A stretch of 62,948 bases of DNA, counting the filler, from Reticulomyxa filosa (Eukaryota; Protista; Foraminifera): assembly GCA_000512085.1 (NCBI GenBank). It is 21 parts of 21 records of this genome, joined end to end, with 100 filler letters (N's around TTAATTAATTAA, not from the genome) between each part and the next. Parts side by side here need not be neighbours in the genome. Positions count along the whole stretch, not along the records: positions 34,519 to 36,740 come from ASPP01016680.1; 20 more parts are not named here. The stretch is one strand, 5' to 3'. Under the pieces are notes generated by a model. The model was given only the letters and a program-made list of their open reading frames with translations, was not told the origin of the DNA and did not search any database. Numbering within the stretch: the first letter of the stretch is position 1; each line of letters starts with the position of its first letter. This document shows, one piece after another, positions 34,519 through 36,840 of the stretch. A program made the position numbers and the translations under genes.

Positions 34519-35459
34519 CCCCCCCTCTCCTTCCGTTTCCTGTTGTACCTCCTAAAAAGCCTTTGACATTGAATTGCACTCCTTTGATTTGTTCCATGAC
34601 AGCACTTCCGATATCGCGATAGGGAGCACCATGTTGCACTTCACCAAAGCCAAGGACTTGCGCGTCGCAGGGCGCGATGAGAGAATGCACACTAATTTCT
34701 CGTTGCTGATGCAATGGACGAATGAAAAACTGTTTCATCGTCGTAAAGTGCTCAATGTCAGGTTGGAACTCGTCCCAATTAACATTGTAAATCGTTCCGT
34801 ACGTCTTGTAAATGAACTTCCGTAACCATAAAAAAGGGATGTCCACATCCATTAGAGCCTTCACCGCACGCGATATTGTACGGTGAGGGAAATATGCTCC
34901 ATACCACGTCGCGTAGAGTGGAATTGAGTGATCGGATAATTCTTTCTCCGCTATTGTCCAACGCTGTTCAAACATTACATATTTATAAATATAGTATACA
35001 TATATGTAATGTATACATATATACATATATATACATATATATATTTATAATATGCAAAGGTTACATAGATGCTTTTCTTTAATAACTGGCTTTGGTTCGG
35101 GTACTTGATATAAACTTTTCATATATTGATACAGCGCATATGTTGAAATTACGCCTGACAAGTAGTACAAGCCTCTGCGTATTGTTTGAGGCCATGATTG
35201 GACTGGGTTTAGTGCGTCCAAATATTCTCTCTCGTTTTTAAATCTCACAACTTCCTTCTCTGTTGTTGCAAGGGTCTGTCCTTTTTTTTTGTTTGATTTG
35301 TTTGAGGGTTTTTTTTTTTGCTTTTGTCCTTTTTTTTCCCGTTGGAGTTGCTGGTTGATGTTAAACTGATTGAGTCTGTGAACAAAATAATCTTGAACAC
35401 TTCCTATTCAAAATAGAGTAGCATCTTGATGAGGTAAAACGAGATCGTGGAATGCGCAT
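34519..35459 (-). CDS. PISD: Phosphatidylserine decarboxylase (mitochondrial type), N-terminal half
   Basis: PHRTISR..WLRKFIYKTY..YNVNWDE..FFIRPL..LIAPCDAQVLGFG..EQIKG; Arg/Ser-rich presequence-like start MRIPRSRFTSSR. Confidence 0.88.
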
Positions 35460-35756
35460 GTTTGATTATATATATATTTGACAGCAATAATTATTTTTTT
35501 TTTTCGAAGTGCTTGTGAGTTTTGCTCAACGTGAAAGTTTAAATAAAACAACAAATCAAGAGCTTGATATTTCGTTTACAGATTTAACGTATTATGGATT
35601 TAAAATTTATGTCTTTGAGAAATACATTTTTACAATTTTAAAACACTAATCTAGACAAGATATTGTTTGAAATGTTGTCTTTTAACAACTTGAAGCAGGT
35701 CTCGGGTGGGAAAAAAACTAGAGACAAGACATGTAGTAACGATAAAAATTGAAACC

Positions 35757-36674
35757 TCACATAAACAAGCATTTATTGCGAGCTCGTATTTTTTCAGGGA
35801 TCATTTCAGTCGTAATATTAACGGTTGCAACTTCTTCATTTTTTGAATTAAAAAGACGTGCAATTTCATCTTCTAAACCGTTCCAAACATTTTCTTGCCA
35901 CCACAGATCATCTTTTCCAACGTTCAAATCTCCATCATTCCCAACAATTATCTTAATTTTTTTGTCTAGAGTTGTAACAAAAAAAGGGTCAGCGTTAAAC
36001 TTGGGCTCTGCAATTCATTTTTTTTAAGATATTTAACTTGGCATGAGCACATGGTGATGAGGAAGAATGAATATCTTGGATTTATTTGAGTTGGTCAAAT
36101 AAAATCCTTTCAAATCAACGGGTTCTTCACTCACATTTTGTAGTTCGAGTGTTGAGCTGCACAAATCCATCCCAGAAAATTGGAGTGGGAAGGGATCACA
36201 AACTTGGAAAAAAGTTGATAATTTTACACGTGTAGGACTATAATCCGTTTCATTAATTTTTTTGCTATTAGTTTTGTCAAATTCAAAGCTCTTGCGCTTG
36301 TGACTGCTATTTGAAACAGAGGAAGATTTATTCGAAGAACTCTTATGCAAACCACTGTTTTGGTTGAAATTGTTTCTGTTTTGATTTTCGTCATTTTCGC
36401 CCAGATTTGAAGACTCCTCATAAACATTTTCATTTTTGCATATTACATTTGTTTCATTTTTTTTTTCAGTGTTTTTTGGAGTCGCACATTTGCTGTTACT
36501 ATTTACAACACGTGACAAGTCATTTTTTGCCGCTTGTCGGGCACGTGTTAAGCCAGGTGTGGTTACTGCAGTACGAGGTTTGTCATTGATGCTTACACGT
36601 TTCTTGCATCCAGAGTTTGTTTGAAAAAAACATTCTGCATCTTTTTCTGCTTCATTCAATATATCACGATATAG
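35757..36674 (-). CDS. Nuclear lamin-like protein, 3' two exons
   Basis: Exons 36674-36038 and 35965-35757: LYRDILNEAE (IF rod-end motif), basic NLS-like patches, lamin tail domain (LELQNVSEEPVDLKGFYL..DLWWQENVW..RLFNSKNEEVA), C-terminal CaaX CLFM-stop. Confidence 0.85.
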
Positions 36675-36840
36675 CTAACATTTCAATTGTTCACCCAAGC
36701 ACAATATCATGCACGTATACTCCAATCCAAAAAAAAAAAANNNNNNNNNNNNNNNNNNNNNNNNNNNNNNNNNNNNNNNNNNNNTTAATTAATTAANNNN
36801 NNNNNNNNNNNNNNNNNNNNNNNNNNNNNNNNNNNNNNNN

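What the first reader, a model, noticed from the sequence alone, without database searches (positions are those of the whole stretch)
35757..36674. Metazoan-type nuclear lamin signature in a protist genome
Seen after manual splicing of a 72-nt intron (35966-36037): LYRDILNEAE (compare the IF consensus TYRKLLEGEE), a tail with basic patches (CKKR, HKRK) and S/T-P sites (TPK, SPTR), an Ig-like lamin tail domain (DLWWQENVW..RLFNSKNEEVA vs lamin A DLVWKAQNTW..ALINSTGEEVA), and CaaX CLFM. The order is exactly that of B-type lamins. The ORF track missed the last exon. Non-animal lamins are known (Dictyostelium NE81 and some SAR lineages), so it may already be catalogued, but it is rare and informative on lamina origin.
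Basis: partly seen in the sequence, partly recalled or inferred. Interest (0 to 1): 0.8.

Follow-up and report, generated by a model that had tools for sequence, protein, structure and literature searches.

The report
Known Reticulomyxa lamin gene, tail end
This is the 3' end of a real nuclear lamin gene of the foraminifer Reticulomyxa filosa, but this exact sequence was already listed as a lamin homolog in 2016; what is new is a corrected last intron.

Summary
The minus strand carries an exon (36674-36038) that begins LYRDILNEAE, a GT-AG intron of 72 nt (36037-35966), and a last exon ending CLFM-TGA.

The piece is a whole 2,222-bp contig of Reticulomyxa filosa (ASPP01016680.1). The gene is RFI_19912 / ETO17410, annotated as a partial hypothetical protein.

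The lamin reading holds on four counts:
- Pfam LTD scores E 1e-6.
- An AlphaFold model's 16 best PDB matches are all lamin Ig-like tail domains.
- A profile of the foraminiferal family hits lamin A/C coil 2B best, and LYRDILNEAE aligns to the IF end motif.
- All complete relatives end C-a-a-M.

The rod itself lies off the contig, which breaks in a poly-T run of the preceding intron. A paralog with the same exon structure has ...KVQLDNEIA as its upstream exon.

It is not new. Table S1 of Koreny & Field 2016 (PMC5630835) lists this very sequence among the R. filosa lamin homologs.

NCBI's 30-nt intron adds 14 residues that no relative has.

No RNA run was listed, so expression and splicing remain unobserved.

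The parts
36675..36740 (-). Last 66 nt of the intron that precedes the LYRDILNEAE exon. It starts with 12 T at the contig end (36729-36740) and ends in the acceptor AG (36676-36675).
   Evidence: In paralog RFI_27865 the matching 91-nt intron (L003:92-182) has a run of about 20 T at the same place and is preceded by the exon ...KVQLDNEIA.
36038..36674 (-). Penultimate exon (212 codons plus 1 base). It encodes the end of coil 2B (LYRDILNEAE), basic patches, an Asn/Ser/Lys-rich linker and the first half of the lamin tail domain.
   Evidence: It is 100% identical to NCBI RFI_19912. It aligns end to end with the paralog exon L003:183-782 and with P0002:4-56.
36645..36674 (-). LYRDILNEAE, the IF-type consensus motif at the end of the rod.
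   Evidence: In alignment A4 it lines up with EIxLYRxILxEAE of all the foraminiferal relatives. The A4 profile aligns this motif to EIHAYRKLLEGEEERL of human lamin A/C.
36597..36605 (-). KKR (in GCKKRVS), at the family's monopartite NLS position.
   Evidence: Column-aligned with RKKRKL / RKRKR of the relatives in A4. It is weaker here: three basic residues against five.
36525..36560 (-). TPGLTRARQAAK, the family-conserved TPG[ILV]xRAAxxA motif (a Thr-Pro site).
   Evidence: A4 has nearly invariant P and R here. A role as a CDK1 site is inference.
36291..36302 (-). HKRK, a second basic patch in the linker.
   Evidence: Paralog RFI_27865 has a similar NKRKHLEF, but BLASTP does not place the two opposite each other, so homology of the patch is unproven.
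36228..36239 (-). SPTR, a full [ST]-P-x-[KR] site. It stands where the relatives have TPG just before the tail domain.
36039..36197 (-). N-terminal half of the lamin tail domain (DPFPLQFSGMDL...LPHHHVLMP).
   Evidence: Pfam LTD on P0001 covers residues 174-277. AlphaFold shows beta strands here and the lamin fold match follows. See also alignment A3.
35966..36037 (-). Last intron: 72 nt, GT...AG, phase 1. The NCBI model instead uses the acceptor at 36008 (30-nt intron 36037-36008) and translates 35966-36007.
   Evidence: The homology test is in A3. The paralog introns at the same codon position are L001:235-342 and L003:784-860.
35760..35965 (-). Last coding exon: C-terminal half of the lamin tail domain, a short tail and the CaaX box.
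   Evidence: It matches the paralog last exons without gaps from the first residue to the CaaX.
35760..35771 (-). CaaX box CLFM. X = Met is the farnesyltransferase type.
   Evidence: The complete relatives end in CRIM, CIVM, CLIM, CLMM, CCIM, CFVM, CIMM, CLVM, CYIM or CLTM.
35757..35759 (-). Stop codon TGA directly after CLFM.

Best explanation
The piece holds the last two coding exons of one of several lamin paralogs of the foraminifer Reticulomyxa filosa (RFI_19912 / ETO17410).

The protein has B-type lamin architecture:
- The end of a coiled-coil rod (LYRDILNEAE). The rest of the rod lies on another contig, because the assembly broke in a poly-T run of the preceding intron.
- A short basic nuclear-import patch.
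- A low-complexity linker with Ser/Thr-Pro sites.
- An Ig-like lamin tail domain, split by a 72-nt intron.
- A C-terminal CaaX box, CLFM.

Inferred mechanism, by homology with animal B-type lamins and the protist lamins tested so far: rod-mediated dimers assemble into filaments under the inner nuclear membrane. The basic patch brings the protein into the nucleus. Farnesylation of the CaaX cysteine anchors it to the membrane. The Ig-like domain binds partners. The S/T-P sites next to the rod may regulate assembly.

Shown here: sequence, exon structure, domain fold and family membership. Inferred: localisation, prenylation, filament formation and expression.
For: Identity and origin:
- Exon A is 100% identical to NCBI 'hypothetical protein RFI_19912, partial [Reticulomyxa filosa]', on a 2,222-bp contig.

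Tail domain:
- Pfam LTD scores E 1e-6 on the stored model.
- AlphaFold with a 22-row alignment gives pLDDT 77 and pTM 0.72, all beta.
- The 16 best Foldseek PDB matches are all lamin B1, A/C or B2 Ig-like domains (E 2e-8 to 5e-5, target TM 0.60-0.75). The next hit is at E 7e-3.

Rod:
- The family profile A4, which contains this exon, hits lamin A/C coil 2B fragments best (E 3e-6 and 1e-5). It also hits the whole vimentin rod (1.5e-5), lamin B1 (2e-4) and lamin A/C residues 30-303 (4e-4).
- Relatives show Pfam Filament matches that run to position 311 of 313, ending at the LYR motif.
- Paralog RFI_27865 has the same three-exon layout, and its upstream exon reads ...KVQLDNEIA.

Relatives:
- Only 20 hits were found among 1.84 billion representatives. 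One of them is spurious.
- They include the full-length Ammonia sp. protein. All share the rod end, NLS, TPG motif and LTD, and the complete ones end C-a-a-M.

Literature:
- Koreny & Field 2016 list ETO17410 with this sequence as an R. filosa lamin homolog.
- They showed that two other protist lamins enter the nucleus and form filaments in human cells.
Against: - This copy's own rod exons are not on the contig, so only 10 rod residues are seen directly.
- Pfam LTD is below the curated cut-off (29.5 against 34.3 bits). This was measured on NCBI's model, which carries 14 probably intronic residues.
- The exons scanned separately give no Pfam hit and only E 0.65 to lamin B1.
- The basic patch at the NLS position is weak (KKR against RKKRK in relatives).
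- No RNA run was listed, so neither expression nor the splice is observed. A pseudogene copy in this multi-paralog family cannot be ruled out.
- Filament scores of the relatives are all below Pfam's cut-off.
Confidence: 0.9

Rival explanations
1. A non-functional copy. This would be a truncated or decaying lamin paralog (pseudogene) in a genome with at least four lamin copies, with no intact rod upstream.
For: - The contig ends 66 nt upstream of the exon.
- No RNA run was listed.
- The NLS-position patch is degenerate.
- Another paralog, RFI_38234, has no stop after its CaaX-like CLII as assembled.
Against: - About 280 codons are open across two exons, with intact GT-AG sites and a phase that restores the family's conserved Asn at the junction.
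- All family motifs and the terminal CaaX plus stop are kept.
- The contig break sits at a poly-T run that is also present in the paralog's intron. That makes an assembly break the simpler reason for the missing rod.
Confidence: 0.07
2. A protein with a lamin-tail-like domain and a CaaX box but no IF rod. Such LTD-only proteins exist in bacteria and in some eukaryotes.
For: - LTD-like domains occur outside lamins (Koreny & Field).
- Only 10 rod residues are visible here.
Against: - LYRDILNEAE aligns with the rod end of every relative that extends upstream.
- An acceptor site directly precedes it, at the same phase-0 position as in paralog RFI_27865, whose upstream exon is coil 2B.
- The fold search returns lamins only, not bacterial LTD proteins.
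Confidence: 0.02
3. A cytoplasmic intermediate-filament paralog derived from a lamin, as in animals, rather than a nuclear lamina protein.
For: - The basic patch at the NLS position is weaker than in relatives.
- R. filosa has several paralogs.
Against: - The CaaX box and the tail domain are retained.
- A second basic patch, HKRK, is present.
- Koreny & Field describe the rhizarian duplicates as having stayed similar to one another.
Confidence: 0.05

Closest known systems
Reticulomyxa filosa lamin homolog ETO17410 (RFI_19912), Table S1 of Koreny & Field 2016, Genome Biol Evol 8:2663 (PMC5630835)
   Same: It is this very gene. Exon A is 100% identical to the NCBI protein, and the table prints the same sequence from LYRDILNEAE to NKCLFM.
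   Different: The published and NCBI model uses a 30-nt intron and so carries 14 extra residues (it reads KPKFNADPFFVTTLD where the 72-nt splice gives a single Asn) inside the tail domain. The 72-nt intron removes them.
R. filosa paralogs RFI_27865 (ETO09514, P0003, contig L003) and RFI_38234 (P0002, contig L001)
   Same: They share the exon layout and intron phases. Exon-by-exon identity is 34-68%. RFI_27865 has CLIM followed by a stop at its end.
   Different: They are different loci. Their last introns are 77 and 108 nt. RFI_38234 as assembled runs on for 8 codons after CLII. Both paralogs have an intron just before TPG that this gene lacks.
Ammonia sp. lamin (MMETSP1384, CAMPEP_0197081440; P0008, 603 aa)
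   Same: A foraminiferal, transcript-derived, full-length relative. It has a rod ending EIELYRNILNEAE, the NLS RKRKR, TPGVSRAAKIAQKDL, an LTD and CLMM.
   Different: 36-38% identical over the tail. It has a 25-30 residue insertion in one LTD loop that R. filosa lacks.
Vertebrate B-type lamins (lamin B1; PDB 3umn, 3jt0, 3tyy)
   Same: The order of parts is the same. The Ig-like tail fold matches (target TM up to 0.75). The rod-end motif aligns. The CaaX ends in Met.
   Different: Only 17-22% identity in the tail domain. LYRDILNEAE stands for AYRKLLEGEE. The linker is long and Asn/Ser-rich. The TPG[ILV]xRAA motif is specific to the foraminiferal group.
Dictyostelium NE81 and the oomycete and dinoflagellate lamins
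   Same: Non-animal lamins with rod, NLS and CaaX. The Phytophthora and Symbiodinium proteins were shown to enter the nucleus and form filaments in human cells.
   Different: No experiment exists for any foraminiferal lamin. NE81 was not compared here.

Membership tests
Nuclear lamin (type V intermediate filament, B-type architecture) | Long central coiled-coil rod of IF type | tested here: inconclusive
   This copy's rod exons lie beyond the contig end. Indirect support comes from two sources. Paralog RFI_27865 has the same intron before LYR, with the upstream exon ...KVQLDNEIA. Full-length relatives have rods that match Pfam Filament across positions 2-313 or 16-311 of 313, though below the cut-off, and the whole vimentin rod in the PDB.
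Nuclear lamin (type V intermediate filament, B-type architecture) | IF consensus motif at the C-terminal end of coil 2B | tested here: met
   LYRDILNEAE (36645-36674) sits in the nearly invariant LYRxILxEAE block of alignment A4. The A4 profile aligns that block to EIHAYRKLLEGEEERL of lamin A/C, E 3e-6.
Nuclear lamin (type V intermediate filament, B-type architecture) | Nuclear localisation signal between rod and tail domain | tested here: inconclusive
   KKR (36597-36605) stands in the column of the relatives' RKKRK but has only three basic residues. A second patch, HKRK, lies at 36291-36302. Function cannot be tested here.
Nuclear lamin (type V intermediate filament, B-type architecture) | Ig-like lamin tail domain | tested here: met
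   The AlphaFold model has pLDDT 77. The top 16 PDB matches are all lamin tail domains, E 2e-8 to 5e-5, followed by a gap to E 7e-3.
Nuclear lamin (type V intermediate filament, B-type architecture) | C-terminal CaaX prenylation box | tested here: met
   CLFM is followed directly by TGA. All complete relatives end C-a-a-M. Prenylation itself was not tested.
Nuclear lamin (type V intermediate filament, B-type architecture) | CDK1-type Ser/Thr-Pro sites flanking the rod | tested here: inconclusive
   On the C-terminal side there are TPGL (conserved in the family), TPK and SPTR. The N-terminal side is off the contig. Phosphorylation is not testable here.
Nuclear lamin (type V intermediate filament, B-type architecture) | Filament formation and location at the nuclear rim | not testable with these tools
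   No experiment on any foraminiferal lamin was found. Two other protist lamins were tested by Koreny & Field.
Pfam LTD (PF00932) | Score at or above the gathering cut-off of 34.3 bits | tested here: not met
P0001 scores 29.5 bits, E 1e-6. Separate exons give no hit. Relatives score 22.8-38.7 bits and two of them pass. P0001 carries 14 probably intronic residues inside the domain.

The most novel reading that the evidence does not exclude
Foraminiferal lamins form a distinct subgroup with its own conserved motif, TPG[ILV]xRAAxxA, between the NLS and the tail domain, and a second TPG just before that domain. R. filosa has expanded the family to at least four paralogs. This copy has a weakened classical NLS and SPTR in place of the second TPG. 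It could therefore be a sub-functionalised lamin, imported or regulated differently in a giant multinucleate cell. None of this is described in the papers read here.
Probability: 0.15. Interest if true: 0.35.

Novelty: already known. Interest (0 to 1): 0.15.

Why it matters
Non-animal lamins bear on whether the last eukaryotic common ancestor had a lamin-based lamina. That point was made in 2016 with this very sequence among the data.

What this check adds is practical:
- A better gene model for the tail domain. The public model has 14 intronic residues inside the Ig fold, and the public models of both paralogs examined are also mis-spliced.
- An explanation for the missing rod: the contig breaks in a poly-T run of an intron.
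- Independent structural confirmation that the foraminiferal tail domain has the lamin fold.

Anyone who builds lamin alignments or trees from the NCBI R. filosa models should correct them first.

Tried and rejected
- Pfam on the two exons separately: no hit.
- PDB sequence search with the exons separately: only lamin B1 at E 0.65-0.9 for the last exon, and a squalene synthase by chance.
- Two-sequence half-domain profiles against the PDB: nothing significant.
- AlphaFold without an alignment: pLDDT 31.6, unusable.
- RNA runs: none was listed.
- Pyrimidine tract as an argument for the 72-nt acceptor: rejected. It favours that acceptor (0.80 against 0.35), but the other R. filosa acceptors seen here have only 0.35-0.45. 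The case rests on homology.
- A ciliate-type genetic code (TAA/TAG read as sense) was considered because the gene ends in TGA. It was rejected because a TGA also lies in frame inside the 72-nt intron, and because the contig is Reticulomyxa filosa.
- The third word search, to fetch the orphan rod fragments (ETO24379, ETO02958), was not run. All paralogs probably break at the same intronic poly-T, so contig ends would not say which rod belongs to this tail.
- Exons were used by reference, and NCBI's stored model served where a single chain was needed.
- P0013, a repeat protein in the big search, was set aside as a spurious low-complexity match.

Full report
**What is in the sequence**

The piece 34519-36740 was read on both strands. 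On the minus strand an exon runs from 36674 to 36038. It follows an AG at 36676-36675 and an in-frame TAG, so it is an internal exon and not a start.

It reads LYRDILNEAE, then GCKKRVS, TPGLTRARQAAK, and a linker of about 100 residues rich in Asn, Ser and Lys that contains TPK, HKRK and SPTR. It ends with DPFPLQFSGMDL...LPHHHVLMP.

A GT at 36037 and an AG at 35966 bound a 72-nt intron in phase 1. The split codon is A|AC, Asn. The last exon (35965-35760) reads KKIKIIVGNDGDL...DLWWQENVW...RLFNSKNEEVA...NKCLFM, followed by TGA.

**Where it comes from**

The word search with the first exon returned one protein at 100% identity: NCBI 'hypothetical protein RFI_19912, partial [Reticulomyxa filosa]', 295 aa, on a contig of 2,222 bases. 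The contig look-up names it ASPP01016680.1 of assembly GCA_000512085.1. The gene is the only one called on it. The piece is therefore a whole contig of a very fragmented assembly: N50 3.6 kb, 50,809 scaffolds, mean intron 87 bp (table in PMC13746701).

**Is it a lamin?**

- *Scans of separate exons.* Neither exon alone matches any Pfam family. Against PDB sequences, the last exon alone gives lamin B1 only at E 0.65.
- *NCBI's stored model.* P0001 matches Pfam LTD at E 1e-6 and 29.5 bits, below the 34.3-bit cut-off.
- *Relatives.* An exhaustive HMMER search with P0001 found only 20 proteins at E <= 1e-3 among 1.84 billion representatives, one of them a spurious repeat protein. They include two R. 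filosa paralogs, the full-length Ammonia sp. protein from MMETSP1384, and short transcript-like contigs from JGI and Logan.
- *Shared architecture.* The relatives show a rod ending ...QLxxEIxLYRxILxEAE, an RKKRK-type NLS, the motif TPG[ILV]xRAAxxA, an acidic or Asn-rich linker, and TPG...LQFSxMDL opening the tail domain; fragments show the parts they cover. The complete ones end C-a-a-M.
- *Pfam on the relatives.* Their LTD scores are 22.8-38.7 bits and two pass the cut-off. Their rods match Pfam Filament below the cut-off. In the relatives that extend that far, the match covers most or all of the profile, and in most it ends at position 311 of 313, at the LYR motif.
- *Family profile against the PDB.* A profile of the family that includes this exon (A4) hits lamin A/C coil 2B best (E 3e-6 and 1e-5). 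Next come the whole vimentin rod (1.5e-5), lamin B1 (2e-4), keratins, and lamin A/C residues 30-303 (4e-4). Generic coiled coils (SMC, myosin) are interleaved with or rank below these, all below lamin A/C and vimentin. The family's EIelYrkILseaEkea aligns to EIHAYRKLLEGEEERL.
- *Structure.* AlphaFold failed without an alignment (pLDDT 31.6). With the 22-row alignment A3 it gave an all-beta domain, pLDDT 77 and pTM 0.72.
- *Fold search.* The 16 best Foldseek matches in the PDB are all lamin B1, A/C or B2 Ig-like tail domains (E 2e-8 to 5e-5, target TM 0.60-0.75). The next match drops to E 7e-3.

The tail domain, the rod-end motif and the CaaX box therefore all place the protein in the lamin family.

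**The missing rod**

The contig ends 66 nt upstream of the exon, in 12 T. The contig of paralog RFI_27865 (L003) shows the matching structure:
- an exon ending ...KVQLDNEIA (L003:2-91);
- a 91-nt GT-AG intron in phase 0 with a run of about 20 T (92-182);
- the exon LYRNILSNAE...LPSNRMLIP (183-783);
- a 77-nt phase-1 intron (784-860);
- the exon (N)ERIKIIVG...ENCLIM followed by a stop.

The two genes align exon by exon from first to last residue. The flank of this gene lines up with the paralog's intron from the poly-T onward. The simplest reading is that the assembler broke at the intronic poly-T and that the coil 2B exon lies a few tens of bases beyond the contig end.

Table S1 of Koreny & Field lists two R. 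filosa rod fragments that stop at ...QLDNEIA without a tail (ETO24379, ETO02958). One of them may be the partner. I could not decide which, and did not spend the last word search on it, because contig ends at a shared poly-T would not discriminate.

**Which intron?**

NCBI's model uses the acceptor at 36008.

- In alignment A3 these 14 extra residues have no counterpart in any of the transcript-derived relatives.
- Exon A ends, and exon B begins, exactly where the relatives run on without a gap.
- The split codon gives Asn, the residue found there in six relatives (...LQP-N-EKV...).
- Both paralogs have an intron at the same codon position and phase, of 108 and 77 nt.
- The low-confidence stretch of the AlphaFold model (residues 61-80) coincides with the extra residues.
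- A 30-nt intron would also be far below the species' mean of 87 nt.

Its Pfam score and fold were therefore not measured. Scans used the exons by reference, or NCBI's stored model.

**Is it new?**

No. Kollmar 2015 found only one rhizarian lamin, from Corallomyxa. Koreny & Field 2016 then reported lamin homologs in Rhizaria, with duplications in three species. Their Table S1 prints this very sequence under 'Reticulomyxa filosa, NCBI ETO17410', beside six other R. filosa fragments and two Ammonia proteins.

**How it most likely works**

The mechanism is inferred from homology with B-type lamins.
- Parallel coiled-coil dimers assemble into filaments.
- Nuclear import goes through the basic patch. 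KKR stands at the family's NLS position, and HKRK lies further on.
- The cysteine of CLFM is farnesylated, since X = Met is the farnesyltransferase type. This anchors the protein at the inner nuclear membrane.
- The Ig-like domain binds partners.
- The S/T-P sites (TPGL, SPTR) are possible phospho-regulation sites.

Only sequence, exon structure, fold and family membership are shown here. No RNA run was listed for this stretch, so expression and splicing are not observed.

**Verdict**

The one small correction is to the gene model.

Noticed in passing
window 34519-35026, minus strand: An unannotated open frame that runs off the contig end matches the start of Pfam PS_Dcarbxylase (phosphatidylserine decarboxylase): E 1.8e-4, 21.7 bits against a cut-off of 22. 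NCBI calls no gene here. A possible first exon (35113-35248, ending CAA|GT) and an intron holding a TA/CATATA microsatellite (about 34985-35050) were seen by eye only.
   Followed up: partly
L003 (ASPP01024024.1) 531-614, 784-860 and 1066-1253: The NCBI model of paralog RFI_27865 (ETO09514) appears wrong in three ways. It reads through an 84-nt intron just before TPGQLCPLQFS. It mis-splices the 77-nt intron in the tail domain. It skips the stop after ENCLIM by inventing an intron, which adds a 36-residue tail. Read plainly, the gene ends CLIM followed by a stop.
   Followed up: partly
L001 (ASPP01044485.1) 235-342 and 535-575: The NCBI model of paralog RFI_38234 reads through its in-frame 108-nt intron. 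As assembled, its CaaX-like CLII is followed by 8 more codons (MCLIFFFV) before the stop. This copy therefore lacks a terminal CaaX, unless there is a sequence error.
   Followed up: no
window 36729-36740 and L003 about 115-134: The contig ends in a poly-T run that corresponds to a run of about 20 T in the same intron of the paralog. Homopolymers inside introns seem to be where this assembly breaks lamin genes apart.
   Followed up: yes
Proteins P0004-P0020 (alignment A4): The foraminiferal lamins share a motif, TPG[ILV]xRAAxxA, about 15-40 residues after the NLS, and a second TPG directly before the tail domain. The papers read here do not mention it.
   Followed up: partly
P0005 (JGI/IMG): One lamin relative, with rod end LYRKILSEAE, an LTD and CIVM, is named 'myosin heavy subunit' by its source. 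This is a likely mis-annotation of a coiled-coil protein.
   Followed up: no
window 36201-36230, minus strand: This copy has 10 extra residues (VKLSTFFQVC) between SPTR and DPFPLQFS, at the spot where both paralogs have an intron just before TPG. No workable splice sites were found, so it is taken to be exonic.
   Followed up: partly
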